From Macrostomum hystrix (lineage: Eukaryota; Animalia; Platyhelminthes), in NCBI GenBank assembly GCA_950097015.1, contig CATNEN010000005.1, positions 1,674,001 through 1,738,000 of the forward strand: 64,000 nucleotides of DNA. The letters are read 5' to 3'. The notes under the pieces are model-generated. The model did not search any database. It had not been told where the DNA came from and worked only from the letters and a program-made list of their open reading frames with translations. The position numbers and the translations under genes were made by a program. Shown here piece after piece: positions 4,797 through 54,495 of the stretch; the stretch's first letter is position 1, and each line of letters starts with the position of its first letter.

Positions 4797-5207
4797 ACCC
4801 AACTCCCCACCTAGCCAACACCCCACCTAGCCAACTCCCCACCTAGCCACCCAACTGCCCACCTAGCCAGCCAACTCCCCACCTAGCCAACACCCCACCT
4901 AGCCAACACCCTACCTAGCCAACACCCCACCTAGCCAACACCCTACCTAGCCAACACCCCACCTAGCCAACTCCCCACCTAGCCACCCAACTGCCCACCT
5001 AGCCAGCCAACTCCCCACCTAGCCAACACCCTACCTAGCCAACACCCCACCTAGCCAACACCCTACCTAGCCAACACCCTACCTAGCCAACACCCCACCT
5101 AGCCAACTCCCCACCTAGCCACCCAACTGCCCACCTAGCCACCCAACTCCCCACCTAGCCACCCAACTGCCCACCTAGCCACCCAACTCCCCACCTAGCC
5201 ACCTAGC
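4797..5207. repeat. 16/20-bp C-rich satellite (CCAACTCCCCACCTAG family)
   Basis: Tandem units CCAAC(T/A)CCCCACCTAG and CCACCCAACTGCCCACCTAG. Confidence 0.95.
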
Positions 5208-5647
5208 CCTCATCTCATTCTCCAGTCTAAAGTTCTTATTGGATCATTGAGAGCCACACTTGAGAACATTGAAGAGCGGTTTTTAGGCGAACAAATTAAA
5301 GATGATTAATTATTAACGCACTCTTTTAAACAAATACAACCACTTAGGTGGAGAAATACAATTATGGAAGAACATTTAAAACAGAAATAATTCAGCAAGA
5401 CAGGCTAATATCGATTTAATAGGCTGATAACTCATGCTTCTATGGCTACAGGGGTGAAATTTTGACACTATGGTGTGGTGCTGGATCGGCACGATGACGA
5501 TCGGGGGCTTTTTCACCTTGGAAACTGTCGACTCAATACCACCAATACGACTCAATACTCAATTAGAAGTCCCCACGCTGACTCTGGTGCTTGTACAATT
5601 GTCAATTGTTAGTACAGGGATATAATAGCATTATTATTACATTATTA

Positions 5648-8600
5648 TTAAGCAGTAGTTGCTTGTGGAAGCGCCGCAGAGGAAGAGGTAGCAACGGCAG
5701 CAGCTGCTGCTGACGATGCTGTTGAATTAGACGGAGTGGAATTCTCGTCAAGCAAAACTTCACTGAGCGGTCGTTGGCGCCTTCCAGTTGAAATGCGGTC
5801 AGTTGCGGTAATGACAGATCGCTGCTGCTGCTGCTGTTGCTGGGCGGTGAAAGACATTTTAGACATTGCACTGACAGTGGTTGGACTGCTTGCACAGCTA
5901 GCCACTATTGAAGCAGCGGAGGCGGCCGTCAGACAGAATCTTTTCTGACGCTTCGCTTCTGAGCAGGATGAGTCTGAGTCCTCTGCTGTTGATGCCGAAG
6001 ACTCAGATTGCTGCTTTTGCTGCTGAAGTTGGCGTTCGAATTCCAAAAGTTGTCCAAGAAAATTGAAATTCAGACTAATACTAGGCCGGCGAGCCTTAAC
6101 GTAGCTAAAAACAGAAGAAGTCACTTTGTTAGGTTGTGCATAATTAGCCTTTCTAAAAATGCATATCGCTTATAAAAATAAAATTCCGCTCACCGATAAG
6201 CTTGATCTTCAGTCATATTGAGATGCTGCATAATGTATGCAATCACCATGGTTGGAGAGCGAGACACGCCAGCAAGGCAGTGTACAAGGCAGCGACCGTT
6301 GCTACGCCAGACATTGTCTAAAATTCAAGAGAAAAAAGATATATTTGTATATTTTTCGATACATATCGGCTTAATACAAACTTTTAAACTTACTGTCGAT
6401 AAAACTTTTTTCGATACATATAGGCAAAAAATGTACAACTTTTAAGTGCCAATAGCCGAGAAAAAAGTTTTTTAGGTAAAACAAACACATACCCAGAAAC
6501 TGGAAAGCCAGTTTGAAATGCGGCAACAATTTGTCGGAGTAGCCGTCGTTAACTGGAACCCGCATGAAATTAGCCTCGTCGACGTGCTCCGACTGCGGAC
6601 AATTGGCGCTCACATTCAATATGTGGGTAATGCCGTGACGCCGGATCACATCTGAGTCGCAGGCGTCAGTTTGAGAGCCGACGTAGACAAAACTTAATAG
6701 TTTAGACATTGCACTGACAGTGGTTGGACTGCTTGCACAGCTAGCCACTATTGAAGCAGCGGAGGCGGCCGTCAGACAGAATCTTTTCTGACGCTTCGCT
6801 TCTGAGCAGGATGAGTCTGAGTCCTCTGCTGTTGATGCCGAAGACTCAGATTGCTGCTTTTGCTGCTGAAGTTGGCGTTCGAATTCCAAAAGTTGTCCAA
6901 GAAAATTGAAATTCGGACTAATACTAGGCCGGCGAGCCTTAACGTAGCTAAAAACAGAAGAAGTCACTTTGTTAGGTTGTGCATAATTAGCCTTTCTAAA
7001 AATGCATATCGCTTATAAAAATAAAATTCCGCTCACCGATAAGCTTGATCTTCAGTCATATTGAGATGCTGCATAATGTATGCAATCACCATGGTTGGAG
7101 AGCGAGACACGCCAGCAAGGCAGTGTACAAGGCAGCGACCGTTGCTACGCCAGACATTGTCTAAAATTCAAGAGAAAAAAGATATATTTGTATATTTTTC
7201 GATACATATCGGCTTAATACAAACTTTTAAACTTACTGTCGATAAAACTTTTTTCGATACATATAGGCAAAAAATGTACAACTTTTAAGTGCCAATAGCC
7301 GAGAAAAAAGTTTTTTAGGTAAAACAAACACATACCCAGAAACTGGAAAGCCAGTTTGAAATGCGGCAACAATTTGTCGGAGTAGCCGTCGTTAACTGGA
7401 ACCCGCATGAAATTAGCCTCGTCGACGTGCTTCGACTGCGGACAATTGGCGCTCACATTCAATATGTGGGTAATGCCGTGACGCCGGATCACATCTGAGT
7501 CGCAGGCGTCAGTTTGAGAGCCGACGTAGACAAAACTTAATAGTTTAGACATTGCACTGACAGTGGTTGGACTGCTTGCACAGCTAGCCACTATTGAAGC
7601 AGCGGAGGCGGCCGTCAGACAGAATCTTTTCTGACGCTTCGCTTCTGAGCAGGATGAGTCTGAGTCCTCTGCTGTTGATGCCGAAGACTCAGATTGCTGC
7701 TTTTGCTGCTGAAGTTGGCGTTCGAATTCCAAAAGTTGTCCAAGAAAATTGAAATTCGGACTAATACTAGGCCGGCGAGCCTTAACGTAGCTAAAAACAG
7801 AAGAAGTCACTTTGTTAGGTTGTGCATAATTAGCCTTTCTAAAAATGCATATCGCTTATAAAAATAAAATTCCGCTCACCGATAAGCTTGATCTTGAGTC
7901 ATATTGAGATGCTGCATAATGTATGCAATCACCATGGTTGGAGAGCGAGACACGCCAGCAAGGCAGTGTACAAGGCAGCGACCGTTGCTACGCCAGACAT
8001 TGTCTAAAATTCAAGAGAATAAAGATATATTTGTATATTTTTCGATACATTATCGGCTTAATACAAACTTTTAAACGTACTGTCGATAAAACTTTTTTTC
8101 GATACATATAGGCAAAAAATGTACAACTTTTAAGTGCCAATAGCCGAGAAAAAAGTTTTTTAGGTAAAACAAACACATACCCAGAAACTGGAAAGCCAGT
8201 TTGAAATGCGGCAACAATTTGTCGGCGTAGCCGTCGTTAACTGGAACCCGCATGAAATTAGCCTCGTCGACGTGCTCCGACTGCGGACAATTGGCGCTCA
8301 CATTCAATATGTGGGTAATGCCGTGACGCCGGATCTGAGTCGCAGGCGTCAGTTTGAGAGCCGACGTAGACAAAACTTAATAGTTTAGACATTGCACTGA
8401 CAGTGGTTGGACTGCTTGCACAGCTAGCCACTATTGAAGCAGCGGAGGCGGCCGTCAGACAGAATCTTTTCTGACGCTTCGCTTCTGAGCAGGATGAGTC
8501 TGAGTCCTCTGCTGTTGATGCCGAAGACTCAGATTGCTGCTTTTGCTGCTGAAGTTGGCGTTCGAATTCCAAAAGTTGTCCAAGAAAATTGAAATTCGGA

Positions 8601-10399
8601 CTAATACTAGGCCGGCGAGCCTTAACGTAGCTAAAAACAGAAGAAGTCACTTTGTTAGGTTGTGCATAATTAGCCTTTCTAAAAATGCATATCGCTTATA
8701 AAAATAAAATTCCGCTCACCGATAAGCTTGATCTTGAGTCATATTGAGATGCTGCATAATGTATGCAATCACCATGGTTGGAGAGCGAGACACGCCAGCA
8801 AGGCAGTGTACAAGGCAGCGACCGTTGCTACGCCAGACATTGTCTAAAATTCAAGAGAATAAAGATATATTTGTATATTTTTCGATACATTATCGGCTTA
8901 ATACAAACTTTTAAACGTACTGTCGATAAAACTTTTTTTCGATACATATAGGCAAAAAATGTACAACTTTTAAGTGCCAATAGCCGAGAAAAAAGTTTTT
9001 TAGGTAAAACAAACACATACCCAGAAACTGGAAAGCCAGTTTGAAATGCGGCAACAATTTGTCGGCGTAGCCGTCGTTAACTGGAACCCGCATGAAATTA
9101 GCCTCGTCGACGTGCTCCGACTGCGGACAATTGGCGCTCACATTCAATATGTGGGTAATGCCGTGACGCCGGATCACATCTGAGTCGCAGGCGTCAGTTT
9201 GAGAGCCGACGTAGACAAAACTTAATAGTTTAGACATTGCACTGACAGTGGTTGGACTGCTTGCACAGCTAGCCACTATTGAAGCAGCGGAGGCGGCCGT
9301 CAGACAGAATCTTTTCTGACGCTTCGCTTCTGAGCAGGATGAGTCTGAGTCCTCTGCTGTTGATGCCGAAGACTCAGATTGCTGCTTTTGCTGCTGAAGT
9401 TGGCGTTCGAATTCCAAAAGTTGTCCAAGAAAATTGAAATTCGGACTAATACTAGGCCGGCGAGCCTTAACGTAGCTAAAAACAGAAGAAGTCACTTTGT
9501 TAGGTTGTGCATAATTAGCCTTTCTAAAAATGCATATCGCTTATAAAAATAAAATTCCGCTCACCGATAAGCTTGATCTTGAGTCATATTGAGATGCTGC
9601 ATAATGTATGCAATCACCATGGTTGGAGAGCGAGACACGCCAGCAAGGCAGTGTACAAGGCAGCGACCGTTGCTACGCCAGACATTGTCTAAAATTCAAG
9701 AGAATAAAGATATATTTGTATATTTTTCGATACATTATCGGCTTAATACAAACTTTTAAACGTACTGTCGATAAAACTTTTTTTCGATACATATAGGCAA
9801 AAAATGTACAACTTTTAAGTGCCAATAGCCGAGAAAAAAGTTTTTTAGGTAAAACAAACACATACCCAGAAACTGGAAAGCCAGTTTGAAATGCGGCAAC
9901 AATTTGTCGGCGTAGCCGTCGTTAACTGGAACCCGCATGAAATTAGCCTCGTCGACGTGCTCCGACTGCGGACAATTGGCGCTCACATTCAATATGTGGG
10001 TAATGCCGTGACGCCGGATCACATCTGAGTCGCAGGCGTCAGTTTGAGAGCCGACGTAGACAAAACTTAATAGTTCAGTCGGTCCCTGATTCGTGGCGTA
10101 GTTTAGCTCGACTAGAAACTGTCGCTGCTGCTGCTGCTGACTACACGGGCCGACGCCATCGACACTATCAGCTCCGGCTAGGACAGCCGGGCATCTGGAC
10201 TCGCAGTACTGCGGATAGGCCGCGGCGAAGTTGGCGAAAGCTCCTGAAACGATGTTGCGGATCGACGGATTTGTAGCTGACTCGGCTAGGAGAGCCTCCT
10301 GAGCGCCGGTCACTACTGTGGCTGCTGCCACATTCGAAGATAGGCAACAGTTATGCTGACAAAATGTAAGCTTCGGTGGTCGCAATTTTCTGCGATTCT
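5648..10399 (-). CDS. MAP-kinase phosphatase (DUSP8/16-like) 3' portion with five tandem catalytic domains; upstream exons absent; frameshift in domain 3
   Basis: Acceptor at 10401-10400. Exon has the rhodanese C-terminal [19 protein letters not shown], then [13 protein letters not shown] and VPVNDG. 124-nt exons carrying [10 protein letters not shown] at 9688-9565, 8843-8720, 8003-7880, 7160-7037 and 6317-6194. Each is followed by a [10 protein letters not shown](P/L)NFNFLGQL exon. Final stop at 5648. Confidence 0.85.
5855..10075. repeat. Tandem intragenic duplication, 840-845 bp unit, 4 junctions / 5 copies
   Basis: Identical junction AATAGTT/TAGACATT at 9229-30, 8384-85, 7544-45 and 6701-02; spacings 845, 840, 843, 843. 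Confidence 0.95.
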
Positions 10400-10560
10400 C
10401 TGAAACAATGAAAAACTTTAATGTTCAAATGCAAGCAAGCAAGAGTTCGCTGTTGCCGTGCAGAATTGAATTGCTGAACCTTGCAGCATATATGTTTGCT
10501 GCAATGCCAAAGTACATCATTAGGTCAACGAAGAGGTGGCTACAGAAACAATGGGCAAAA

Positions 10561-10960
10561 TCAATTATGGCAACTTGGATTACGCCATCCTATATACTGG
10601 AATCCTTGCTGGAATCGAATGCGGCCAAAGAGGTATTGAAATTTAAATTTACCTATCAAATTAGGTAAATGACAAGAGATTAGACAGTGATCAGAATTTC
10701 CTATTGGTTTAAGAATATTACAATGGGCATCTGTGCCATTTGATTTCAGCCAAGATATATGGGCATTAGAGTGGCCATTAAAGTCTCCAATTAAATGGAT
10801 TGAGCTAGATGGATTAGTTAACCCAATAGGCAATAGCCTGAATTTACAAAGCCACAACTTTGTAACATTGACAAGATAAGAGTCATCAGCAGGAGGAGGT
10901 CTATAGACAAAACAAAAAATAGAGGGACAGGTTTTAAGTTAGAATTTATCAATACAAAAT
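10561..10960 (-). pseudogene. Degenerate non-LTR retrotransposon AP-endonuclease fragment
   Basis: YRPP, LIGDFNGH and GNSDHCLI motifs with indels. Related copies at 15289-15576, 48551-49010 and 50995-51300. Confidence 0.65.
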
Positions 10961-10964
10961 TTGC

Positions 10965-12374
10965 CTAACCCGATCCACGCTGACTCTGGTGCTTGTTGCT
11001 GTCGTGGCAGCCGGTTGGTCCCAGGTTGATGTATTGACTGGCGTCAGGGTCGGCGCGACTAGCAGTAGCTAACTGCTGCTGCTGTTGCTGTGGTGGCAGC
11101 CGGTAAGCGTCTTCGTCAGTGCTGGCCGAAGCGTTTCCAGTCAGCGGTGGAGGCAATCGATAATCGTCTTCAACGAATTCGGGGTGATCAGACGCAACAG
11201 GCGGCAATCGATACTCATCTTCACCAGTTTTATATAAACTTTGGCCCGTAACATGCGGTGGCGGCAATCGATAATCGTCCTCGTCTGTACTAGGAGGCAT
11301 GCGATAATCATATTCGTTGCTAGGGTTACCGCCTCCTCTAGCAACCGTTGGAGGCATGCGATAATCGTCTTCAGGTGCCTGGGCAGTTGGTCGTCTGATC
11401 GAAGAATTTAACGGGAATCGACCGGTTGAGGCGTGGAGCGATCGGTAAAATAGAATTACAGATTTCTCATAGACATGCTTTATTAAATAACTCGTGATTC
11501 TGGTCTTGAAACCCGCTGTAAATCCCTTGATTGTAGCTCAGAAATCTCGCAGTAAATCCATTGATTAAAGCTCAGAAATCCCGCTGTTAATCCATTAATT
11601 ACATCTCAGAAATCCCGCTGTAAATCCATTGATTAAAGCTCAGAAATGCCGCTGTAAATCCATTGATTAAAGCTCACAAATCCCACTGAAAATCCTTTGA
11701 TTATAGCTTAGAAATCCCACTGAAAATTCTTTGATTATAGCTTAGAAATCCCACTGAAAATCCCTTAATTTACAGTTATTTATCAAAGAGTAAAGACCAC
11801 ATTCTAGGCTATAAATAATCTAGGCTAAATCGCGAGCCTAGTCCCACATTTCTTACCTGATAGTGCCATCGATGCTATCGCCTGGAATGTAGCGACCAGA
11901 CGGTGAAAGCATGTTTTGGGAGAGCGGCTGAAATTGCTGCACTTGTAGAAATGACGCACCAGATAGAGGAGGAAATTGTCCTCTATAAGAGGGATCGATA
12001 GTGCTATCATTTATCCCGGACAGATCGTCTTCGCCAAGTCCGCACGCGTTGCTCAGATGGCTGACCCAGCGCTCCATGGTATTGCCCTCTGGCAGGAAAT
12101 AGTAGGTGCGCATCTGCCTGCGGTGGACAGTCTCCAGCAGGAAGAATGCCGTCTGATCCCGTCTGAAGAATGCTGGGGCGCGGAAAAGCCTAGGCTGCAG
12201 CTTGTTCAGCAGATATATTGGCGGAATTACGTAAGTGATGTTATTGGCTTGCTCCAAATCCACCCGGCCCTTGCGCTTAGTCTGCAGTGCGTCTTCATAA
12301 TAGGTCAGTAGGTAGTTGCTAGAGCGGTCTTTAGTTCTGATGCAGCTTAGTACGAAATAGCGACGCCGCCAGCG
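10965..12374 (-). CDS. Gab/DOS-like PH-domain adaptor, copy 1 (lacks the native first exon)
   Basis: Exon 12374-11857 (RWRRRYFVL...YYEDALQTKRKGRVDLEQA...MERWVSHL) and exon 11394-10965 with six Y-R-[LM]-P-P motifs plus YINL. The acceptor and exon 1 seen in copy 2 are replaced by unrelated sequence. Confidence 0.75.
11508..11770. repeat. 34-bp intronic minisatellite (shorter inverted copy at about 50345-50470)
   Basis: Unit about CAGAAATCCCGCTGTAAATCCATTGATTAAAGCT. Confidence 0.85.
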
Positions 12375-12704
12375 ATTGTCGCTATTACTGCTCGTCGACC
12401 TTATTACTTCTGTAATGTTGGTTTACTAAAATATTACATTCTGTAACATAATGTATGATTACATTATAATTGCTATAAGCTAAAGCTGATGTCTTGCTAA
12501 TTGGGAGTCCGCTTTTAGGGTTTGTTTGGCTCATAAAAATTGATAGTTAAAATACAAACTGAATATGTCAGTTTCCAGGTGCCGGGTTGAATCACTCATA
12601 ACGACCAATGGGTTTGCATTTTGCGTTTTTTTCAAATGTCCGGTACCCTGAGCCAATCGGAGAGCCTGACAAGTATGAACTTTCCGCGAGGCACGCGTTG
12701 CCCC

Positions 12705-14962
12705 TCAGAGACCTGCGAGAATGCCAGATAACAACTCGTAGTTGCACAGCGCGTAGTTAAGTTGCGGGTTTACCTTCCGCTTGGCAGCCAGGGCCTCCCT
12801 CGCCGGCTGCGTTTGATGCCTTCGCTTCTGCCTTTTGGTCAGCCGAGGCGGCGGCGGCGGTGTCGGCGGCGGCGGCGGAGGTGTCGGCGGATGCGGCGGC
12901 GGCGGTGTCGGCGGCGGCGGTGGCGGGGGTGTCGGTGGATGTGGCGGCGGCACCAATGGTTGGGGCGGCGGCTGTGTCGGCGGCGGCGGCGGCGGGGGTG
13001 TCGGCGGATGCGGCGGCGGCGGAGGTGTCGGCGGATGCGGCGGCGGCGGTGTCGGCGGCGGCGGTGGCGGGGGTGTCGGCGGATGCGGCGGCGGCACCAA
13101 TAGTTGGGGCGGCGGCTGTGTCGGCGGCGGCGGCGGCGGGGGTGTCGGCGGATGCGGCGGCGGCGGTGGCCCCGCGGTAGCCTCTGCTGCTGCTGCTGCT
13201 GGTGCTGTTGCTGCTGCTGTTGCTGCTGCTGCTGGTGCGGCTGCTCCGGCGCCGGCGGCCGCGACTGCATTCACCAGTGCTTGCGCTAAAAAATATGAAT
13301 GGGCTAATGTTCATAAATTTAGAATGTCATAGTACGAGAGCGATGAGACACGGGAGAGATAAGACACGAGAGCGATGAGACACGGGAGAGATTAGACACG
13401 AGAGCGATGAGACACAGGAGAGATTAGACACGGGAGAGATGAGACTCGGGAGAGATGAGACGCAGGAGAGATTAGACACGGGAGAGATGAGACACGGGAG
13501 AGATTAGACACAGGATAGATTAGACACGGGAGAGATGAGACACGGGAGACATGAGACACGGGATAGATTAGACACAGGAGAGATTAGACACGGGAGAGAT
13601 GAGACACAGGAGAGATTAGACACGGGAGAGATTAGACACGAGAGAGATGAAACAGGACACTGTAGATGTCAGAAGGGGCAACGGGCCGGATTTGGGAGCT
13701 TCGAGGGCCGCATCTGGCCCGCGGGCCGGAGTTTGCCGACCCCTGAATTAAATTATATTAATATTCAAATTAAAATAAGCGAAAGTTCGAATGTCAAATT
13801 TGTGTGCGTACGTCTACTGTACATCTGATACCAAAACTACACAGTTTCAAGACGAGAATGTGAAGACTAATTATTCGTTTATTCTACTTAATCATTGAGC
13901 TACATTTTTTTACTTTATTTCGAGATTTAGTCTGTTTAGCTTTTGTTTTATTAGAGAGGTTAAAATGAACTTAAACTGCAGTTTAGGGTGCGTTCGAGTA
14001 GCTTAAAATGACTTAAACTAAACTTAAACTTAAATTTAAGCTCTCAGCATTTAAGCTCTCAGCATTTAAGCTCTCAGCATTTAAGCTCTCAGCATTTAAG
14101 CTCTCAGCATTTAAGCTCTCAGAATTTAAGCTCTCAGCATTTAAGCTCTCAGCATTTAAGCTCTCGGCATTTAAGCTCTCAGCATTTAAGCTCTCAGCAT
14201 TTAAGCTCTCAGCATTTAAGCTCTCAGCATTTAAGCTCTCAGCATTTAAGCTCTCAGAATTTAAGCTCTCAGCATTTAAGCTCTCAGCACACTTACCAAC
14301 TGGTGGGTCTTCAATTAAGCGGCGCAGAACCATACGCAGCTGCACTTCATCTAGGCGGTCAACGACGGTTGCCGCCTGAAGCCGCTGCGCCTCGACTGGC
14401 TGCTGCTGCGCCTCCAGCTCGACCGGCTGCTGCTGCTGCGGGGCGACCGACGCCTGCAGAATGGCCGGCAGAGTGCGCAGGTCGCTCCCCTTAATTTGGA
14501 CGCCGTGGGTCCATAGTGCCCACCGGGCATCCACGCGCCAGTACATCCTCTGGATTAAAATGGAATGGGTGGGATACAGCTCTCAGGTCAGCAAGAGAGC
14601 GAGAGCGAGAGCGACAGAGAGCGAGAGAGCGAGAGCGACAGAGAGCGAGAGAGCGAGAGCGAGAGAGCGAGAGCGAAAGCGAGAGCGAAAGTGAGAGCGA
14701 AAGCGAGAGCGAAAGCGAGAGCGAAAGCGAGAGCGAAAGCGAGAGCGAAAGCGAGAGCGAGAGAGCAAGAGCGTGCGAGCGAGAGTGAGAGAGCGAGAGA
14801 GCGAGAGCAAGTGGCAGGGAAGGAAAATAATAACATAGGATAAGTACTTACGGCGTTACCGCCAGAATACTGGTAAGTCTGCGGGGCGTGCCTTCTCGCC
14901 GGACCCGCCCCCAGAACGCATTGGCACAATCTATCCCGCAAATGTGCAGGTTTGACTTGCAT
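12705..14962 (-). CDS. Orphan 3-exon gene, about 314 aa, Gln/Ala/Pro-rich C-terminal half with basic NLS-like patch
   Basis: Exons 14962-14852 (phase 0, GTAAGT donor), 14549-14297 (phase 1, GTAAGT donor) and 13285-12705 (TTTTTTAG acceptor) join in one frame: 945 nt ending in TGA. The true start may lie further 5'. Confidence 0.55.
13335..13650. repeat. 18-bp purine-rich minisatellite (copy at about 47090-47405)
   Basis: Unit GAGACACGGGAGAGAT(TA/GA). Confidence 0.9.
14035..14290. repeat. 15-bp minisatellite in intron 2 of the orphan gene
   Basis: (AAGCTCTCAGCATTT)n, about 17 copies. Confidence 0.95.
14595..14812. repeat. GAGAGC/GAAAGC compound microsatellite
   Basis: Direct inspection. Confidence 0.9.
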
Positions 14963-15288: not shown

Positions 15289-15576
15289 CTAGGCTAAAGT
15301 AATATGGGCATTAAAGTGGGCATTAAAGTATCCAATTAAATAGATTGGGCTAGATGGATTTGTTAACCTAATAGGCAATAGCCTGAATTTACAAAGCCAC
15401 AACTTTGTAATGTTGACAAGATAAGAGTCATCAACAGGTCTATAGACAAAACATAAAAATAGAGGGACAGGTTTTAAGTTAGAATTTATCAAGACAAAAT
15501 TTGCCAATTGACAACTGACAAGCAAATAGAATAGGGAGTTCTTAATATAAACGGAAATGCCTATTTTGTTGCCCAT
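15289..15576 (-). pseudogene. Degenerate LINE AP-endonuclease fragment
   Basis: GISVYIK, FVYRP and LIGYFNAH motifs. Confidence 0.6.
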
Positions 15577-18257: not shown

Positions 18258-19735
18258 CAACATCTAGCCAACTCCCCAACTAGCCACCCAACTGCCCACC
18301 TAGCCACCCAACTGCCCTTTTAGCCACCCAACTCCCCACCTAGCCAACACCCCACCTAGCCAACACCCTACCTAGCCAACTCCCCAACTAGCCACCCAAC
18401 TGCCCACCTAGCCACCCAACTGCCCTTTTAGCCACCCAACTCCCCACCTAGCCAACACCCCACCTAGCCAACTCCCCACCTAGCCACCCAACTGCCCACC
18501 TAGCCAGCCAACTCCCTACCTAGCCACCCAACTGCCCTTTTAGCCACCCAACTGCCCACCTAGCCACCCAACTGCCCTTTTAGCCACCCAACTGCCCACC
18601 TAGCCACCCAACTGCCCTTTTAGCCACCCAACTGCCCACCTAGCCACCCAACTGCCCTTTTAGCCACCCAACTCCCCACCTAGCCAACACCCCACCTAGC
18701 CAACACCCTACCTAGCCAACTCCCCAACTAGCCACCCAACTGCCCACCTAGCCACCCAACTGCCCTTTTAGCCACCCAACTCCCCACCTAGCCAACACCC
18801 CACCTAGCCAACTCCCCACCTAGCCACCCAACTGCCCACCTAGCCAGCCAACTCCCTACCTAGCCACCCAACTGCCCACCTAGCCACCCAACTGCCCACC
18901 CAGCCACCCAACTCCCCACCTAGCCAACACCCCACCTAGCCACCTAACTCCCCACCTAGCCAACACCCCACCTAGCCAACTCCCCACCTAGCCACCCAAC
19001 TGCCCACCTAGCCAGCCAACTCCCCACCTAGCCACCCAACTCCCCACCTAGCCAACACCCCACCTAGCCAACTCCCCACCTAGCCACCCAACTGCCCACC
19101 CAGCCACCCAACTCCCCACCTAGCCAACACCCCACCTAGCCACCTAACTCCCCACCTAGCCAACACCCCACCTAGCCAACTCCCCACCTAGCCACCCAAC
19201 TGCCCACCTAGCCACCCAACACCCCACCTAGCCAGCCAACTCCCCACCTAGCCACCCAACTGCCCACCTAGCCACCCAACACCCCACCTAGCCAGCCAAC
19301 TCCCCACCTAGCCAGCCAACTCCCCACCTAGCCACCCAACACCCCACCTAGCCAGCCAACTCCCCACCTAGCCAGCCAACTCCCCACCTAGCCAGCCAAC
19401 TCCCCACCTAGCCAGCCAACTCCCCACATAGCCACCCAACTCCCCACCTAGCCAGCCAACTCCCCACCTAGCCAGCCAACTCCCCACCTAGCCAGCCAAC
19501 TCCCCACCTAGCCACCCAACACCCCACCTAGCCAGCCAACTCCCCACCTAGCCAGCCAACTCCCCACCTAGCCAGCCAACTCCCCACTTAGCCAGCCAAC
19601 TCCCCACCTAGCCACCCAACACCCCACCTAGCCAGCCAACTCCCCACCTAGCCACCCAACTCCCCACCTAGCCAACACCCCACCTAGCCACCTAACTCCC
19701 CACCTAGCCAACACCCCACCTAGCCAACACCCCAG
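18258..19735. repeat. 16/20-bp C-rich satellite, about 1.5 kb, same family as 4797-5207
   Basis: Units CCAACTCCCCACCTAG, CCACCCAACTGCCCACCTAG and CCAGCCAACTCCCCACCTAG. Confidence 0.95.
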
Positions 19736-19816
19736 CTATACCAAAGCCCACGGCCGAGACCACAAATATCTCAAGAGATTAGTAAGTGCCCTGACTCTGT
19801 TCCACAATATTAACTA

Positions 19817-38618: not shown

Positions 38619-41215
38619 TCCAACTATACTAAATCTCTAAAGTCTGTCTGTCTGTCTGTCTGTGGAATTTCGATACACAGGCTAAATGCCTCAACCAAAT
38701 TTGATCGCGTTTTTTGCTAAACATGCCAAATTTTACTGGCATGAGACCTTGAAAATTTCGTTAGTCTGCTTCAATGCTAACAATATTAAATATTCGAAAA
38801 ACGAGTTTTCCTATTGCTTTCAATAGGAGGCCAAACAAGGTTAAATTAGAATAGGGCCGGACACTGTCAGCTTTATTAGATTGCATCGGTGCTTTTTCTC
38901 GCCCGCGCGTGCATTGGTATAGCACTGAACAGGGCCCGATACTCTCAATTGAATAGGATTGCGTCACTGCTTTTCGACCCGTACGTACGTTTATAAATTT
39001 GTCTCTTGGCTGATCGAGTGATTTGATTTAAATACGCAAACCGTACATAGCAGATTTCATGATTGGGCTTTTATGATGCTCAATGCTAGCGAGACCTCTC
39101 CTCCTCCTTTCTATCCATAAAACTGCAGCCTTTCTATTGTCAAACCTTGTCTCGACTTCGATCATTGTGCCGCTTTCTTTTCATCTAGCTCCGAAGTAAA
39201 GTACTTTAATGCTATTGTAGAATGCAGGTAGAATTTCAGCATCGGTTTTGTTACTGCTTCTTTTTCTTCTAATCTTCTAAACATCAGCAGTTAAAAACGT
39301 AAGTTCCTGTTTATTAGTATTTTTTGGGCATTTTTGGGTTCGAGTATAAATACGAGTAAGTAAGTAAGCGATTTTGGTTAGCTACTGTCGAAGCAGATAT
39401 TTGTTAGCTTTATTATTCCTGTACTCGCTTTCAGAAAATAGTATTCGTTTTCGAGTAAAGCAGCAAGTTTTATTCGATAATAAAACTTAGGAAATATTTT
39501 TTGTGCATAGCTGCAGGCGCTATCACAATTGAGAACTGCAAGAAAAAAATATTGAGCGCAGCTAAGAGCGTAAATTATTTCCAATTTTTCTATTTTTTAG
39601 CATTGCTTTAAGCGTTATTCGATTAAAAAAATGGCTTATTTTATAATAATAATTATAAAACTTTATTCGACGAAGTCTGATCGAAACCGTTTTCTAAAGT
39701 GCTCAACGATTTTCTAAATGTGTCCAACGATTTTCTAAATGTGTCCAACGATTTTCTAAATGTGTTTAACAGTTTTCTAAATGTATCTACCGTGCCACAT
39801 GTAACAGGAGATGTAACAGGAGATATTTGTTGCCTTCTGGGCTGAGTAAAACGATGGACACATCGTTTCTATGCTATTTGGGGGCAATGGTTTCCTGTCA
39901 AAGAAAAAGGGCAAAAATTTCTTGCTGCGAGTTTGGTAGCCTGCAAGTAGCCTCCATTCTGGTATTATGGAGGTTCTCTTCTGTTTGAAGAACATTAGTT
40001 CTCTGCTGCTGGGGGAATTAGTTCTCGGCTGCTGGGGGAATTGGTTCTCTGTTGCTCGGGGAATTAGTTCTCTGTTGCTGGGGAAATTAGTTCTCTGCTG
40101 CTGGGGAAATTAGTTCTCTGCTGCTGGGGAAATTAGTTCTCATGGCAAAACCAGCGTTTGAATCATGGCTAAACTAGAGTTTGAATCATAGTTAAACCAG
40201 AGTCTGAATCATTCTAAGCCAGAGTCTGAATCATGGCTAAACCAGAGCTTAAATCATGGCTAAACCAGAGTCTGAATCATGGCTAAATTTACGTTTGAAT
40301 CATGGCAAAACCAGAGTTTGAATAATGGCTAAACAAGAGTTTGAATCATGGCTAAACCAGCGTTTGAATCATGGCCAACCAGCGTCTGAATCATGGCTAA
40401 ACCAGAGTTTATATCATGGCTAAACCAGAGTTTGAATCAAAGATAAACCAGAACTGGGGGATAATCGTCAACTGTGGGATAATTGTAAACTGGGGAATCA
40501 TCATCAAATGGGGATCATGGTCAACTGGGAGATCATTGTCAACTGGGTGATCATCATCAACTGGGGGATCATTGTCAACTAGGGGGTAATAGCCAACTGG
40601 GGTAACATTGTCAACTGGGGATCATCATCAATGGGGGATCATAGTCAACTGGGAGATAATTGTCAACTGGGTGATCATCATCAACTGGGGGATCATTGTA
40701 ACCTGGGGGATCAATGTAAACTGGGGGATCATTGTCAACTGGGTGATTATCTTCAACTGGTGGATCATTGTCAACTGTGGGATCATTGTCAACTGGGGGA
40801 TCATTGTCAACTGGTGGATCATTATCAACTGGGGGATCATTGTCAACTGTGGGATCATTGTCAACTTGGGGAACATTGTCAACTGGGGGATCATCATCAA
40901 CTGGGGGATCATTGTCAACTGGGGAATCATTGTCGACTGGGGGACCATTGTCAACTGGGGGATCATTGTCCCAGATCATTGTCAACTGGGGGATCATTGT
41001 CAACTGGGGGATCATTGTCAACTGGGGGATCATCATCAACTGGGAATCATTGTCGACTGAGGGACCATTGTCAACCGGGGGATCATTATCAACTGGGGGA
41101 TCATTGTCAACTGATCATTGTAGCGTAAAAAAGGCTAAAAATACAGCTGCTAAAAAGTGTATACTGGACGAATTAAAAATATTTCTGCTCCCCGAAGGGG
41201 GGCAAAACTTGCTAG
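38619..41215 (+). mobile_element. Non-autonomous Helitron, unit 2
   Basis: Starts TCCAACTATACTAAA directly after the CTAG of unit 1; first about 0.9 kb closely matches 20820-21680; ends with the hairpin and CTAG at 41212-41215. Confidence 0.85.
40140..41115. repeat. 23-bp satellite (about 40140-40450) followed by 18-bp satellite (about 40450-41115)
   Basis: GAATCATGGCTAAACCAGAGTTT, then TCAACTGGGGGATCATTG. Confidence 0.92.
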
Positions 41216-41809
41216 TCCACTATACTAAAAATGAAATGGTTGGTTGGTTGGTTGGTTGGTTGTAATTGATTTTCTCCCGAACGGCTCAACCGATTTTCAC
41301 CATTTCTTCACCAAAAGATGCTAAATATGGGGACAATTTTACACGTATTTTTATTAAGCTGAACTTCATTGCTAAGGGGATTAAATATTCGAAAAACATG
41401 ATTTTTTAAAGGTCAAACCATCTTGGCCTATTGAGAATTTCACTGACAGCCACTGAATTAGAATTGCATCGTCAAATTGCGCAACAACCCCTAGCTGATT
41501 GAATTTGAAGCCTGCACTCTGGAGACAAATTTGAAATAAATGTACACAACCAACTGCGAGACTGAGTGTACTCTATTTTCTTACTTCATTGTACAAAGCC
41601 AGAACTTTGAGAATTCATTTTATAAGGCTGATTTTTGCACCCACTAACCAACAGTCGGAATAGCCGATGTGTAGGCACTAGGAATAGGTTAGGCTAGGCT
41701 AGGGTTCGATTCTGCACTGGGTCAAATCATTTAGACTAATTTTCAGCCAGTAGTGATTGAAGATTATTTTATATTATTTTTTATATTTCGTAAATAAAAT
41801 ATCATAAAT

Positions 41810-44095: not shown

Positions 44096-44099
44096 GAAA

Positions 44100-46179: not shown

Positions 46180-46295
46180 GAATTCAGTACTTCGCAAAGT
46201 CAAACACTTCTTCTTCTTCTGCGTCGGCCTGCTGCTGCTCCAGCCTCCTCGCTGTCCTGTCGCTGAGTTGTTACTTCTGTAATGTTAGTAATAAT

Positions 46296-47769: not shown

Positions 47770-48863
47770 ATATTTTTAAACGCTTTAAAATAATTAAGTA
47801 TATGCAAGTTTTTAGTATATTTTTGTTGCTATATTTATACGTTTTGTTTTTTTGTTATAATGAATGGTTATGTTTAGCTCAATGCAGATATTTGAAACGC
47901 TGCACGTTTTCGGCGCGTGTCGTGCAGCTGTTTGAGGTCACACGTGTAAGAATTCAGATTCAAATCCAAGTGCTAGTAGTGTGAGACACTACACCTCCAC
48001 TCCCATCTTATCACTCCCACTCGCACCTTGAACTATAAGAAATGGCTTTGAGATTTCACTAGTGGAACCTAATATATTATTTTTGTTATGTAAACAATTA
48101 TCCTAATAATTGGTTTTTTGAACATATTTTAAATGGATATATTTTTATAGAATATATGTATAAAATCTTAGACGTCTATCTACACCAAAGACTACCATTG
48201 ACTACCTTTGAATAGAATGCTACTAACCTATAAACTTTAGACTCCTAGCATAGTTAAAATCATTCTTTAAGGATTTGGAGCTAAAAGACGTTGCTTTTTT
48301 ATTTGTAAAATTTGTAACTGGGTCATGGGATATTTTAAAAACAACCATTAAAAGATGTGTTTTCCTGTGACAAGGTTGTATCGGTGTAAAGGAAACCTCT
48401 TTTATGGTCATTCACATTAAGATTTTCCTTTCATGCTACTTCTTGGCCTCTTGGAGCCCTACCTGTTAGCTAGAAGGAAAGAGACAATGATTTCTACACA
48501 ATCTGCAATTGGCCAGGCTGCTTTTGGGGGCATAATTCATAGGCAACAAAATGGGCATTTCTGTTTATATTAAGAACTCCCTATTCTATTTGCTTGTCAG
48601 TTGTCACTTGGCAAATTTTGTCTTGATAAATTCTAACTTAAAACCTGTCCCTCTATTTTTATGTTTTGTCTATAGACCTGTTGATGACTCTTATCTTGTC
48701 AACATAACAAAGTTGTGGCTTTGTAAATTCAGGCTATTGCCTATTAGGTTAACAAATCCATCTAGCCCAATCTATTTAATTGGATACTTTAATGCCCATA
48801 TTACTTTAGCCTAGCCTATGTATCCTAGAAACTGTGATTTCATTTATATATAATAAATTTAAT
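47770..48863. other. Inverted segmental duplicate of about 15240-16357
   Basis: Reverse-complement match; mirrored ORFs 48223..48411 and 48551..48814. Confidence 0.85.
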
Positions 48864-49541
48864 TTGATATTTGGTAAATTTAACAATTGTTCTTTTAGTA
48901 TGCCCAATATCTTGGCTGAAATCAAATGGCACAGATGCCATGGATGCCCATTGTAATATTCTTAAACCAATAGGAAATTCTGATCACTGTCTGATCTCGT
49001 CATTTACCTAATTTGATGGGTAAATTTCAATTTCAATACCTCTTTGGCCGCATTTGATTAGCAGGTATGGCAATGCTGTCTGCTGCATTTTTTCAGTAAG
49101 TTTAAGATAGCAAGGATTCCAGTATTTAGGATGGCGTAATCCAAGTTGCCATTTCACAAGTTGCCATAATTGATTTTGCCCATTGTTTCTGTAGCCACCT
49201 CTTCATTGACCTAATGATGTACTTTGGCATTGCAGCAAACATATTTGCTTCAAGGTTCAGCAATTCAATTCTGCACAGCAACAGCAAACTCTTGCTAGCT
49301 TGCGTTTGAACATTAAATTTTAAGATATATGAGATTTTGTCTCATATATCTACTGTAGATTTGTCTCATATTATTCAAAATATTTTTGTTGTTCCTAAAT
49401 CTGTTTCCATGACAAAATTAAAGTATTATATTAGTTTAACAATTTATTTGCTTTGTTTCAGCCCATTATACCAAACCAATGTTTCAACTGGCCAACTTAT
49501 TTAGCTGCACCTCTGCCCAAGCAGCAGCTCGACCTGGCACA

Positions 49542-50990
49542 ATGGACCAGAGAGAGACAATATTACAGGGCTGGTTAGTTAAATCGCCACCATTTCAACC
49601 ATCTGGTGGTGGTTCCAGCATTTTCCGTAGGCCACAGCCACTTCAACCAGTGAGTCTAAAGTGCATTGTCATCCATTAGTATTATTGCACCAATGATACA
49701 ATTTCCTCATTTTTTATAGCGCTGGCGGCGTCGCTATTTTGTACTAAGCTGCATCAGAACTAAAGACCGCTCTAGCAACTACCTACTGACCTATTATGAA
49801 GACGCACTGCAGACTAAGCGCAAGGGCCGGGTGGATTTGGAGCACGCCAATAACATCACTACTCACGTAATTCCGCCAATATATCTGCTGAACAAGCTGC
49901 AGCCTAGGCTTCTCCGCGCCCCAGCAAGGCCAGCATTCTTCAGACGGGATCAGACGGCATTCTTCCTGCTGGAGACTGTCCACCGCAGGCAGATGCGCAC
50001 CAACTATTTCCTGACAGAGTGCAATACTCAAATGGAGCGCTGGGTCAGCCATCTGAGCAACGCGTGCGGACTTGGCGAAGACGATCTGTCCGGGATAAAT
50101 GATAGCACTATCGATCCCTCTTATAGAGGACAATTTCCTTTTCTATCTGGTGCGTCATTTCTACAAGTGCAGCAATTTCAGCCGCTCTCCCAAAACATGC
50201 TTTCACCGTCTGGTCGCTACATTCCAGGCGATAGCATCGATGGCACTATCAGGTAAGAAATTTGGGACTAGACTCGCGATTTAGCCATAGATTATTTATA
50301 GCCTAGAATGTGGTCTTTACTCTTTTATAAGTAACTGTAAATTAAGGGATTTTCAGTGGGATTTCTAAGCTATAATCAAAGGATTTTCAGTGGGATTTCT
50401 AAGCTTTAATCAATGGATTTACTGCGAGATTTCTGAGCTACAATCAAGGGATTTACAGCGGGTTTCTAGACCAGAATCACGAGTTATTTAATAAAGCATG
50501 TCTATGAGAAATCTGTAATTCAACCTCAACCGGTCGATTCCCGTTAAATTCTTCGATCAGACGACCAACTGCCCAGGCACCTGAAGACGATTATCGCATT
50601 CCTCCAACGGTTGCTAGAGGAGGCGGTAACCCTAGCAACGAATATGATTATCGCATGCCTCCTAGTACAGACGAGGACGATTATCGATTGCCGCCACCGC
50701 ATGTTACGGGCCAAAGTTTATATAAAACTGGTGAAGATGAGTATCGATTGCCGCCTGTTGCGTCTGATCACCCTGAATTCGTTGAAGACGATTATCGATT
50801 GCCTCCACCGCTGACTGGAAACGCTCCGGCCAGCACTGACGATGACGCTTACCGGCTGCCACCACAGCAACAGCAGCAGCAGTCAGCTACTGCTAGTCGC
50901 GCCGACCCTGACGCCAGTCAATACATCAACCTGGGACCAACCGGCTGCCACCACAGCAGCAAGCACCAGAGTCAGCGTGGATCGGGTTAG
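49542..50990 (+). CDS. Gab/DOS-family PH-domain adaptor, copy 2, 3 exons, 356 aa
   Basis: Exons 49542-49649, 49720-50252 and 50561-50990 (1071 nt, in frame). GWLVKSPP...WRRRYFVL...YYED...GRVDL matches the Gab PH pattern GWLxKSPP...WKRRWFVL. Six YxxP motifs and YINL. Confidence 0.8.
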
Positions 50991-51574
50991 GCAAATTTTG
51001 TATTGATAAATTCTAACTTAAAACCTGTCCCTCTATTTTTTGTTTTGTTTATAGACCTCCTCCTGCTGATGACTCTTATCTTGTCAATGTTACAAAGTTG
51101 TGGCTTTGTAAATTCAGGCTATTGCCTATTGGGTTAACTAATCCATCTAGCTCAATCCATTTAATTGGATACTTTAATGCCCACTCTAATGCCCATATAT
51201 CTTGGCTGAAATCAAATGGCACAGATGCCCATGGATGCCCATTGTAATATTCTTAAACCAATAGGAAATTCTGATCACTGTCTAATCTCTTGTCATTTAC
51301 CTAATTTGATGGGTAAATTTCAATTTTAATACCTCTTTGGCCGCATTTGATTCCAGCAAGGATTCCAGGATGGCGTAATCCAAGTTGCCATTTTACAAAT
51401 TGCCATAATTGATTTTGCCCATTGTTTCTGTAGCCACCTCTTCGTTGACCTAATGATGTACTTTGGCATTGCAGCAAACATATTTGCTGCAAGGTTCAGC
51501 AATTCAATTCTGCACAGCAACAGCGAACTCTTGCTAGCTTGCATTTGAACATTAAAGTTTTTCATTGTTTTCAG

Positions 51575-52835
51575 AGAATCGCAGAAAATTGCGACCACCG
51601 AAGCTTAAATTTTGTCAGCATAACTGTTGCCTATCTTCGAATGTGGCAGCAGCCACAGTAGTGACCGGCGCTCAGAAGGCTCTCCTAGCCGAGTCAGCTA
51701 CAAATCCGATGAACCGCAACATCGTTTCTGGAGCTTTCGCCAACTTCGCCGCGGCCTATCCGCAGTACTGCGAGTCCAGATGCCCGGCTGTCCTAGCCGG
51801 AGCTGATAGTGTCGATGGTGTCGGCCCGAGTTGTCAGCAGCAGCAGCAGCGACAGTTTCTAGTCGAGCTAAACTACGCCACGAATCAGGGACCGACTGAA
51901 CTTTTAAGTTTTGTCTACGTCGGCTCTCAAACTGACGCCTGCGACTCAGATGTGATCCGGCGTCACGGCATTACCCACATATTGAATGTGAGCGCCAATT
52001 GTCCGCAGTCGGAGCACGTCGACGAGGCTAATTTCATGCGGGTTCCAGTTAACGACGGCTACGCCGACAAATTGTTGCCGCATTTCAAACTGGCTTTCCA
52101 GTTTCTGGGTATGTGTTTGTTTTACCTAAAAAACTTTTTTCTCGGCTATTGGCACTTAAAAGTTGTACATTTTTTGCCTATATGTATCGAAAAAAAGTTT
52201 TATCGACAGTACGTTTAAAAGTTTGTATTAAGCCGATAATGTATCGAAAAATATACAAATATATCTTTATTCTCTTGCATTTTAGACAATGTCTGGCGTA
52301 GCAACGGTCGCTGCCTTGTACACTGCCTTGCTGGCGTGTCTCGCTCTCCAACCATGGTGATTGCATACATTATGCAGCATCTCAATATGACTCAAGATGA
52401 AGCTTATCGGTGAGCGGAATTTTATTTTTATAAGCGATATGCATTTTTAGAAAGGCTAATTATGCACAACCTAACAAAGTGACTTCTTCTGTTTTTAGCT
52501 ACGTTAAGGCTCGCCGGCCTAGTATTTGTCCGAATTTCAATTTTCTTGGACAACTTTTGGAATTCGAACGCCAACTTCAGCAGCAAAAGCAGCAATCTGA
52601 GTCTTCGGCATCAACAGCAGAGGACTCAGACTCAAGAAGCGAAGCGTCAGAAAAGATTCTGTCTGACGGCCGCCTCCGCTGCTTCAATAATGTCAGTGCA
52701 ATGTCTAAAATGTCTTTCACCGCCCAGCAACAGCAGCAGCAGCGATCTGTCATTACCGCAACTGACCGCATTGCAACTAAATGGCGCCAACGACCGCTCA
52801 GCTTCATGATTAGTATGATGCATTGGAACAGCTGA
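51575..52835 (+). CDS. MKP/DUSP 3' fragment, copy 2, single catalytic domain, altered tail
   Basis: Exons 51575-52108, 52286-52409 ([10 protein letters not shown]) and 52499-52835. Small deletions shift the tail frame relative to copy 1. No N-terminal exons seen. Confidence 0.75.
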
Positions 52836-54334: not shown

Positions 54335-54495
54335 GGGGAGTTGCTAGCTGTGGGGGAGTTGGCTGGCTAGGTGGGGAGCTGGCTGGCTAGGTGGGGAGTT
54401 GGCTTGCTAGGTGGGGAGTTGGCTGGCTAGGTGGGGAGTTGGCTGGCTAGGTGGGGAGTTGGGTGGCTATGTGGGGAGTTGGCTGGCTAAGTGGG
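54335..54495. repeat. 20-bp satellite, reverse complement of the 4797/18258 family
   Basis: GGCTGGCTAGGTGGGGAGTT units. Confidence 0.9.

What the first reader, a model, noticed from the sequence alone, without database searches (positions are those of the whole stretch)
5648..10399. Five-domain tandem MAP-kinase phosphatase built by in-frame intragenic amplification
Seen: an 840-845 bp unit holding the three catalytic-domain exons and both introns occurs five times. Each junction fuses ...SAMSK to LLSFVYVG... through a 2-bp microhomology inside coding sequence, so the frame and all GT/AG sites are kept. All five [10 protein letters not shown] loops are intact. Known: MKP-type DUSPs normally have one catalytic domain. 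Inference: splicing would give a poly-phosphatase with up to five active sites on about 50-aa Ser/Gln-rich linkers. A 5-bp deletion at 8335/8336 frameshifts domain 3, so as written the protein stops after two full domains. Domain 5 has SLNF instead of SPNF.
Basis: partly seen in the sequence, partly recalled or inferred. Interest (0 to 1): 0.8.

Follow-up and report, generated by a model that had tools for sequence, protein, structure and literature searches.

The report
Tandemly amplified start-less phosphatase gene copy
The five in-frame repeats of a MAP-kinase-phosphatase-type catalytic domain are really in the assembly, but they sit in a decayed spare copy of a gene whose intact one-domain original lies on another contig. 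This copy has lost its start codon, so it is most likely an amplified pseudogene, not a five-headed enzyme.

Summary
OBSERVATION CONFIRMED. Five head-to-tail units of 840-845 bp (5858-10073, gene on the minus strand) are about 99% identical. Each holds the 3' part of exon 1, exon 2, the 5' part of exon 3 and both introns of a DSPc phosphatase. Every splice site and every [10 protein letters not shown] loop is kept, and one module is 579 nt, or 193 codons.

INTERPRETATION MOSTLY NOT SUPPORTED.
- An intact three-exon, 372-codon, single-domain gene lies on contig C3.
- The window's array copy, a second inverted single-unit copy in the window (about 51.5-52.8 kb) and two copies on C2 all share a 10-bp deletion that removes the ATG.
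- Each copy has further lesions of its own.
- The copies lie behind a truncated Gab-like gene copy in satellite- and transposon-rich DNA.
- Inside the array, all four exon substitutions change an amino acid, and there is one 5-bp frameshift.
- The variants are nested (units 1-2 against 3-5). The junction occurs once more, on contig C1. The amplification therefore looks biological, not assembler stutter.

Copy number, the frameshift and expression remain unverified. A start codon donated by a flatworm spliced leader is not excluded.

VERDICT: ordinary, low interest.

The parts
9229..10073 (-). Repeat unit 5 on the + strand, which is catalytic domain 1 in gene order. It holds the exon 1 part (9866-10073), intron 1 (9689-9865), exon 2 (9565-9688), intron 2 (9476-9564) and the exon 3 part (9229-9475).
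8384..9228 (-). Repeat unit 4, which is domain 2. It is identical to unit 5. The fused exon (exon 3 part plus exon 1 part) is 9021-9475, 455 nt.
7544..8383 (-). Repeat unit 3, which is domain 3. It has a 5-bp deletion at 8332-8336, so the fused exon 8181-8630 is 450 nt, and a premature stop follows at 8258-8260.
6701..7543 (-). Repeat unit 2, which is domain 4. It shares derived states with unit 1 (Q>E, A>S, three intron sites) and has its own E>K change at 7432.
5858..6700 (-). Repeat unit 1, which is domain 5. It has a P>L change in the conserved SPNF motif (6072).
5648..5857 (-). Unique 3' end of exon 3 (…MSFTAQQQ… to the stop codon at 5648-5650). It is homologous to the end of the intact gene on contig C3.
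10074..10399 (-). Unique 5' part of exon 1 (…[12 protein letters not shown]… to …GPTE). The native ATG is missing because of a 10-bp deletion at about 10393-10394.
10400..10470 (-). Remnant of the parent gene's 5' UTR or upstream flank. It marks the limit of homology to the C3 gene and contains the acceptor-like TTTCAG that ends at 10400.
10968..12374 (-). Truncated copy of a Gab/Dos-like gene upstream on the same strand. It has the PH-domain exon and a YRxPP-rich tail. It lacks exon 1, and its last exon is cut short at the 22-mer at 10975-10996.
51498..52801 (+). Second, inverted copy (B) of the same phosphatase gene, with a single unit. It has the same ATG deletion, 8-bp and 28-bp deletions in exon 3, and a truncated 3' end.
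49360..50987 (+). Gab-like gene copy belonging to copy B. Here it has exon 1 (MDQRETILQGWLVKSPP…).

Best explanation
The array is a real, recent tandem amplification inside a non-functional duplicate (unprocessed pseudogene) of a short DUSP8/16-like dual-specificity phosphatase gene.

Proposed order of events (shown where cited under evidence, otherwise inferred):
1. The intact gene on contig C3 (3 exons, 372 codons, one DSPc domain) was copied with about 100 bp of upstream DNA.
2. The copy was joined, behind a repeated element, to a truncated copy of a Gab-like gene whose parent is on C34.
3. It lost its ATG through a 10-bp deletion.
4. It was dispersed to repeat-rich sites on C5 (twice, in inverted orientation), C2 (twice) and C1.
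5. In one lineage, an illegitimate join at a 2-bp microhomology duplicated an 843-bp piece running from inside exon 1 to inside exon 3.
6. Unequal exchange or replication slippage between the units later raised the number to five.

The frame is kept by chance (one in three). As written, no five-domain protein is made, and most likely no protein at all.
For: INTACT PARENT. C3 has ATG, GT/AG sites and exons of 538+124+454 nt, which is 372 codons. Against an orthologous spliced transcript from another sample (P0001/L014) its dN/dS is about 0.14.

SHARED ATG LOSS. Copies A, B, C2a and C2b all lack the ATG. Compared with the outgroup transcript, the loss is a simple 10-bp deletion. There is no in-frame ATG in the 222-codon open frame upstream until the middle of domain 1.

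PRIVATE LESIONS IN EVERY COPY.
- B: 8-bp and 28-bp deletions.
- C2a and C2b: deletions of about 130 bp and 18 bp.
- C1: a fragment joined out of frame.
- A: a frameshift in unit 3 and P>L in SPNF.

CHANGES INSIDE THE ARRAY. There are 4 exon substitutions, all nonsynonymous. There are also 4 intron changes and one exon deletion.

BRANCH COUNTS. The family branch has 13 nonsynonymous and 6 synonymous changes, against 2 and 2 on the C3 branch.

NO OBVIOUS PROMOTER. The upstream Gab-like copy lacks its first exon in copy A and is itself a truncated copy of a C34 gene.

SETTING. Satellites and transposons fill the window.

REALITY OF THE ARRAY. The variants are nested: units 1-2 share 5-6 derived states against units 3-5. 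The 30-nt junction occurs exactly five times in the genome, four times here and once on C1 in a distinct sequence context.
Against:
- In the catalytic core the family branch shows 2 nonsynonymous and 4 synonymous changes. dN/dS against C3 is only 0.1-0.2 for the repeat unit. This hints at some past constraint, although the numbers are small.
- All splice sites and active-site loops are still intact in five units.
- If the genome is a Macrostomum flatworm, a spliced leader ending in ATG could supply a start (PMC10468722). Four weaker AG sites would put that ATG in frame.
- The very uneven divergence from C3 is unexplained: intron 1 is 22% diverged while exons are 2-4%.
Confidence: 0.72

Rival explanations
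1. The copy is expressed and makes a phosphatase with tandem catalytic domains. A spliced leader ending in ATG, or an exon of the Gab-like gene, would supply the start. As written, the product would have two full domains and then stop. Skipping the frameshifted exon pair (any exon 2 donor to any later exon 3 acceptor keeps the frame) would give other domain numbers.
For: - All donors, acceptors and HCxxGxxRS loops are intact, and the module is in frame.
- Spliced-leader trans-splicing affects 10-20% of genes, and the leader ends in ATG, in the likely source genus (PMC10468722).
- AGs ending at 10416, 10398, 10371 and 10356 would place that ATG in frame.
- dN/dS in the catalytic core against C3 is low.
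Against: - The best acceptor-like site (ending at 10400) puts a leader ATG out of frame, giving a 29-codon ORF.
- The orthologous transcript is not trans-spliced there, because its 5' UTR reads through the site.
- The Gab-like copy upstream lacks its first exon.
- Sister copies are plainly dead.
- All 4 exon substitutions in the array are nonsynonymous, and one of them hits SPNF.
- The frameshift would expose a transcript to nonsense-mediated decay.
Confidence: 0.1
2. Assembly or polishing error. The junction exists, but the copy number (5), the single-base T-run differences or the 5-bp deletion are artefacts of a noisy-long-read assembly polished with short reads.
For: - That assembly was built with canu from PacBio reads and polished with Arrow and Pilon (PMC10468722).
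- Short-read polishing inside five near-identical units and five or more paralogous copies is error-prone.
- Two of the unit differences are homopolymer lengths.
Against: - Six substitutions define nested unit types, which assemblers do not invent.
- A 4.2-kb array is shorter than typical long reads.
- An independent junction-bearing fragment exists on C1 with its own flanks and its own variant mix.
Confidence: 0.15
3. The dispersed, partly inverted start-less copies, including the array, act as a source of small RNAs that regulate the intact C3 gene. Amplification would raise the dose.
For: - Copies A and B lie in inverted orientation about 42 kb apart in repeat-rich DNA, and the same is seen on C2.
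- The copies are 93-97% identical to the parent's exons.
Against: - There is no small-RNA or transcript data.
- The arms are too far apart for a simple hairpin.
- Nothing distinguishes this from neutral decay.
Confidence: 0.07
4. The Gab-like plus phosphatase composite is cargo captured by a Helitron or CACTA transposon, which would explain both its dispersal and its mix of fragments from unlinked genes.
For: - Fragments of two unlinked genes (parents on C34 and C3) lie in the same orientation with their introns kept.
- Earlier notes place a Helitron and a CACTA element between the two window copies.
Against: - There is no sequence similarity at all between the 20-40 kb transposon region and the composite or its flanks.
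- Copies share different extents of flank: C2a shares more than 3 kb of the C3 3' flank.
- The C2 region is not a copy of the window as a whole.
- No termini were identified.
Confidence: 0.05

Closest known systems
DUSP8 / DUSP16 (M3/6, MKP-7) catalytic domains, the JNK/p38-directed MKP subgroup
   Same: These are the best solved-structure matches: 4jmk at E 1.7e-16 and 4yr8 at E 1.2e-15 for the exon 1 part, and 4yr8 at E 6.8e-11 for exon 2. The copy shares the HCxxGxxRS loop, the SPNFNF motif and the DSPc fold family.
   Different: The whole gene lineage (C3 gene, P0001, P0045) has no rhodanese/CH2 docking domain. The window copy has no start codon and carries five domain repeats.
Unprocessed (duplicated) pseudogenes in segmental duplications, with internal tandem duplication
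   Same: There is an intact parent elsewhere, and introns are kept. The copies carry shared and private disabling lesions and are dispersed in repeat-rich DNA. The tandem expansion started at a microhomology.
   Different: The amplified piece happens to keep frame, splice sites and active sites, so it mimics a multi-domain gene.
Tandem catalytic domains of receptor tyrosine phosphatases (D1-D2), which arose by intragenic duplication (my own knowledge)
   Same: Repeated Cys-based phosphatase domains lie in one reading frame.
   Different: Those are classical PTP domains: two of them, ancient, expressed and conserved. Here there are five DSPc repeats, about 99% identical, in a start-less copy. 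None of 7 sampled relatives has more than one DSPc domain, and none of the 150 best relatives shows more than two matched stretches.
Young chimeric multi-copy genes such as Sdic of Drosophila melanogaster (PMC7475035, title and abstract only)
   Same: Pieces of two genes are joined and then multiplied.
   Different: Sdic is expressed and functional. Here the joined pieces have no continuous reading frame. The Gab-like part ends in a stop, and the C1 join is out of frame.

Membership tests
Dual-specificity phosphatase, DSPc (PF00782) | Match to the DSPc profile across the domain | tested here: met
   The exon 1 part matches profile positions 1-69. Exon 2 matches 66-108 (E 9.4e-15). Exon 3 matches 103-133.
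Dual-specificity phosphatase, DSPc (PF00782) | Active-site loop HCxxGxxR(S/T) | tested here: met
   [10 protein letters not shown] is present in all five exon 2 copies.
MAP-kinase phosphatase (MKP) subfamily in the strict sense | N-terminal rhodanese/CH2 domain carrying the kinase-interaction motif | tested here: not met
   No rhodanese match lies near any family copy, although the paralogue on C37 has one 11 kb upstream. The C3 exon 1 ORF, P0001 and P0045 show only DSPc. Only the last few residues of that domain (…GGFANF…YPQYCE) are kept.
MAP-kinase phosphatase (MKP) subfamily in the strict sense | Closest relatives are MKPs and not atypical DUSPs | tested here: met
   DUSP8 and DUSP16 come first, followed by DUSP7, 6, 1, 4 and 10. 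Same-genome paralogues on C37 and C7 share the intron positions.
Functional protein-coding gene | Start codon and an uninterrupted spliced reading frame | tested here: not met
   The ATG is deleted. A frameshift in unit 3 gives a stop at 8258-8260.
Functional protein-coding gene | Transcription and splicing | not testable with these tools
No protein from this species' own gene is in the protein collections.
Unprocessed pseudogene | Intact parent paralogue elsewhere, introns retained in the copy | tested here: met
   The C3 gene is intact with 372 codons. The copies keep both introns.
Unprocessed pseudogene | Relaxed selective constraint | tested here: inconclusive
   The family branch has 13 nonsynonymous and 6 synonymous changes. 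Within the array the count is 4 and 0. The A-versus-B ratio is 0.9. These fit neutrality, but the catalytic core shows 2 and 4, and counts are small. The outgroup is saturated at synonymous sites (dS about 1.6).
Helitron or other transposon gene capture | Shared element termini flanking the captured fragments | tested here: not met
   There is no similarity between the window's transposon region and the composite or its flanks. The copies differ in extent. The test was limited, and termini were not searched for by motif.

The most novel reading that the evidence does not exclude
The start-less copy is rescued by trans-splicing of a spliced leader that ends in ATG. This is a known feature of Macrostomum. 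The ATG would be placed in frame at one of the weaker AG sites (ending at 10398 or 10356). The animal would then make a phosphatase with two catalytic DSPc domains in tandem, or more if the frameshifted exon pair is skipped or the deletion is a polishing error. No such domain arrangement was seen among the 150 closest relatives.
Probability: 0.06. Interest if true: 0.7.

Novelty: new member of a known kind. Interest (0 to 1): 0.2.

Why it matters
As it stands this is a caution. An internally amplified pseudogene can keep frame, splice sites and catalytic motifs, and so pass for a spectacular multi-domain enzyme. Only a look at the rest of the genome shows what it is: an intact parent on another contig, a shared loss of the start codon, and broken sister copies.

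It also gives a small, clean, datable example of array growth. An 843-bp array was seeded at a 2-bp microhomology and grew stepwise, with nested variants and a junction-bearing offshoot on another contig.

Only if RNA showed in-frame expression would it become a rare natural case of tandem DSPc domains.

Tried and rejected

SAME-SPECIES TRANSCRIPTS IN THE PROTEIN COLLECTIONS. Two homologous-protein searches and the representative search returned only orthologues from other samples (P0001, P0045). Even the intact C3 protein is absent. The blank therefore says nothing about expression.

WHOLE-WINDOW SEGMENTAL DUPLICATION ON C2. Rejected: only the 3-4 kb composites and some satellites match.

HELITRON OR CACTA CAPTURE. 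No support.

REPEATED ELEMENT BETWEEN THE GAB-LIKE TAIL AND THE PHOSPHATASE (10564-10938). By eye it recalls an endonuclease domain of a non-LTR retrotransposon, but Pfam gave no match.

ATLAS LOOK-ALIKES. Only generic DUSP clusters came back.

LITERATURE. The search on DUSP, tandem duplication and chimeric genes found nothing specific.

MY FIRST GUESS OF AN INSECT GENOME WAS WRONG. The contig count and size match the Macrostomum hystrix assembly, and earlier notes call the genome a Macrostomum flatworm.

EXON BOUNDARY AT THE AG ENDING AT 10244. I first took it for an exon 1 acceptor because the C37 paralogue has an intron there. The orthologous transcript reads through it, so in this lineage it is inside exon 1.

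JOINED SPLICED MODEL. I did not hand one to any search tool. All searches were exon by exon, by reference.
Full report
1. WHAT IS IN THE SEQUENCE

The repeat is real and far beyond chance. The repeat finder places five copies with start-to-start spacings of 843, 843, 840 and 845 bp. My alignment of units 5858-6700, 6701-7543, 7544-8383, 8384-9228 and 9229-10073 shows 8 variable sites and one 5-bp deletion.

The gene reads on the minus strand. Six-frame translation shows five open copies of '...[16 protein letters not shown]...'. It also shows five fused stretches '...[17 protein letters not shown]...[15 protein letters not shown]...FQFL'. Pfam DSPc is hit piece by piece. All donors (CTGG|GTATGT, TATCG|GTGAGC) and acceptors (TTTTAG|AC, TTTTTAG|C) are present five times.

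From those landmarks:
- The fused exons are 9021-9475, 8181-8630, 7336-7790 and 6493-6947. They are 455 nt long, except the second, which is 450 nt.
- The exon 2 copies are 124 nt.
- One module is therefore 579 nt, or 193 codons, and is in frame.
- The 5-bp deletion (position ambiguous within 8332-8336) shifts the frame of domain 3 and gives a stop at 8258-8260.
- The last domain has SLNF in place of SPNF (6072).
- Comparison with single-unit copies confirms the 2-bp (AA) microhomology at the junction.

2. THE LOCUS IS ONE OF SEVERAL COPIES, AND THE INTACT GENE IS ELSEWHERE

A search of the window's own genome with one unit found further copies:
- a second copy inside the window (51.9-52.7 kb, opposite strand);
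- two copies on contig C2;
- one on C3 (93% identical);
- a fragment on C1;
- a distant paralogue on C37.

A protein search returned P0001, a 360-residue product of a 1261-nt transcript-like contig from another sample. It is spliced exactly at the predicted exon borders and begins MVLCRKFRPERLTF. Searching the own genome with P0001 gave its best match on C3, from residue 1.

The C3 locus (L011) holds an intact gene. It has an ATG, GT/AG introns at the same positions, and exons of 538, 124 and 454 nt, giving 372 codons and a TAA stop. Against P0001's transcript its dN/dS is about 0.14, so the lineage is constrained.

This lineage has DSPc only. No rhodanese match lies near any copy, whereas the C37 paralogue has one 11 kb upstream. 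C3's exon 1 ORF, P0001 and P0045 show only DSPc. The closest solved structures are the DUSP8 and DUSP16 catalytic domains.

3. THE WINDOW COPIES ARE BROKEN

In the multiple alignment, the array copy (A), the window's second copy (B) and both C2 copies all read ...GAGAATCGCAGAAAAT... where C3 has the ATG. Against the outgroup transcript (...CAGAGAATC-ATGGTTCTGT-GCAGAAA...) this is a plain 10-bp deletion that removes the start codon. Upstream, the open frame is closed by a stop at 10425-10427. It contains no ATG until '...NFMRVPV...' inside domain 1.

Homology to C3 ends about 100 bp upstream of the former ATG, so no parental promoter is likely to have come along.

Each copy has private damage:
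- B has 8-bp and 28-bp deletions in exon 3 and a lost 3' end.
- The C2 copies lack about 130 bp of exon 1 and 18 bp of exon 3.
- The C1 copy is a 595-bp fragment.

4. THE SURROUNDINGS

Upstream on the same strand lies a PH-domain gene of the Gab/Dos type. It is also a copy.
- Its parent is on C34, 92% identical, with a last exon that runs more than 150 codons further. A more distant canonical paralogue is on C39.
- The dispersed copies are cut short at a 22-mer (10975-10996).
- Copy A has also lost the Gab-like first exon. Homology to copy B stops at 12374.

Between the two gene pieces lies a repeated element with no Pfam match. Satellites of 16, 18-23 and 34 bp and transposons fill much of the window. 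The C2 region is not a copy of the whole window, because only the composites match. The window's transposon block shares nothing with the composite.

5. IS THE ARRAY BIOLOGICAL?

I could not look at reads. Internal evidence favours a real array.

First, units 1-2 share derived states at five or six sites (two amino-acid changes, three or four intron sites) against units 3-5. Units 1 and 2 each have one private change, and unit 3 has the deletion. This nested pattern suggests one early duplication, a period of divergence of about 0.7%, and then re-duplication of each type. Assemblers do not produce such patterns.

Second, the 30-nt junction occurs exactly five times in the genome. Four are here and one is at C1:11965806-11965835. 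The C1 fragment has its own flanks and its own mix of variant states. It is joined, out of frame, to the Gab-like tail.

Caveat: the genome's size and contig number (220,453,370 bases, 42 contigs) match the Macrostomum hystrix assembly. That assembly was built with canu from PacBio reads and polished with Arrow and Pilon (PMC10468722). Earlier notes of this scan also call the genome a Macrostomum flatworm. With that technology, T-run lengths and even the 5-bp deletion could be polishing errors within five near-identical units.

6. SELECTION

- Within the array, all four exon substitutions change an amino acid. One hits the conserved SPNF motif. Exons and introns have changed at similar rates.
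- A versus B gives dN/dS of about 0.9.
- Polarised with the outgroup, the copies' branch carries 13 nonsynonymous and 6 synonymous changes, against 2 and 2 on the C3 branch.
- These figures fit relaxed constraint, but counts are small and the outgroup is saturated at synonymous sites.
- Against this, the catalytic core on the copies' branch shows 2 nonsynonymous and 4 synonymous changes. The unit's dN/dS against C3 is 0.1-0.2.
- One thing I cannot explain: intron 1 and the upstream stretch differ from C3 by about 20-22%, while exons differ by 2-4%, intron 2 by 4.5% and the 3' flank by 3.4%.

7. VERDICT

The most likely reading (about 0.7) is an unprocessed pseudogene. It is start-less, has no evident promoter, and is one of at least five decaying copies. 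In it, an 843-bp internal piece was duplicated at a microhomology and then expanded by unequal exchange. The kept frame is a one-in-three accident.

The reading that would make it interesting is not excluded. In Macrostomum, 10-20% of genes receive a spliced leader whose last three bases are ATG (PMC10468722).
- The strongest acceptor-like AG (ending at 10400) would put that ATG out of frame, giving a 29-codon ORF.
- AGs ending at 10416, 10398, 10371 and 10356 would put it in frame.
- The orthologous transcript is not trans-spliced at this place.
- I give this reading about 0.06-0.1.

Among the 150 closest relatives in 1.84 billion representative proteins, none showed more than two matched stretches. 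The seven I scanned, six of them the ones with two stretches, each have a single DSPc domain. A tandem-DSPc protein would therefore be unusual if it existed.

8. METHOD NOTES

All protein searches were made exon by exon or ORF by ORF, by reference. Selection counts were summed over exons without joining them.

Noticed in passing
window 5573-5594 and 10975-10996: An exact 22-bp direct repeat (CCACGCTGACTCTGGTGCTTGT) brackets the repeated element plus the phosphatase block. The parent Gab-like gene on C34 has this sequence once, with one mismatch, and its last exon continues for more than 150 codons after it. Copy B and the C2 copies have it only once.
   Followed up: partly
L011 (C3:15503501-15513500) against window copies, intron 1: Intron 1 and the 60-80 bp upstream of the ATG differ by about 20-22% between the intact gene and its copies. 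Exons differ by 2-4%, intron 2 by 4.5% and the 3' flank by 3.4%. This mosaic is unexplained (patchy gene conversion, or fast turnover of an A+T-rich intron).
   Followed up: partly
window 12534-13887 and 46289-47641: A 1.35-kb direct repeat, 99.4% identical, lies next to both Gab-like copies but in opposite orientation relative to them. It includes a proline/threonine-rich low-complexity open frame.
   Followed up: no
window 4799-5208, 18261-19738, 54331-56467; 40140-45800; 11508-11770: Three kinds of short tandem repeat were seen. A 16-bp unit (CCAACACCCCACCTAG) forms satellite arrays at three places. Arrays of 18-23-bp units span about 5.6 kb. A 34-bp repeat (7.8 copies) lies inside the Gab-like copy, and it is longer in the C34 parent.
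   Followed up: no
window 10564-10938, 48536-48811, 51017-51244, 15302-15505: A repeated element has an open frame containing '...GDFN...SDHCLIS...'. By eye it recalls the endonuclease domain of a non-LTR retrotransposon, but Pfam found nothing.
   Followed up: partly
G000:C39:88333-88557 and 89962-90186 (L016): Two 188-bp fragments of phosphatase exon 1, 98% identical to copy B, lie 1.6 kb apart in tandem. This is another small offshoot of the family.
   Followed up: no
G000:C37:4404190-4417438 and C7:11428034-11429474: These are two canonical paralogous MKP-type genes with the same intron positions. The C37 gene has a rhodanese match 11 kb upstream. The C7 gene aligns with P0001 from residue 1 and so may share the short MVLCRK-type N-terminus.
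   Followed up: partly
L009 2632-4156 and L011 1034-4019: The intact C3 gene and copy C2a share more than 3 kb of 3' flank, including a 43-bp-unit satellite. The 'parent' itself therefore also sits in repeat-rich DNA near the end of its contig.
   Followed up: no
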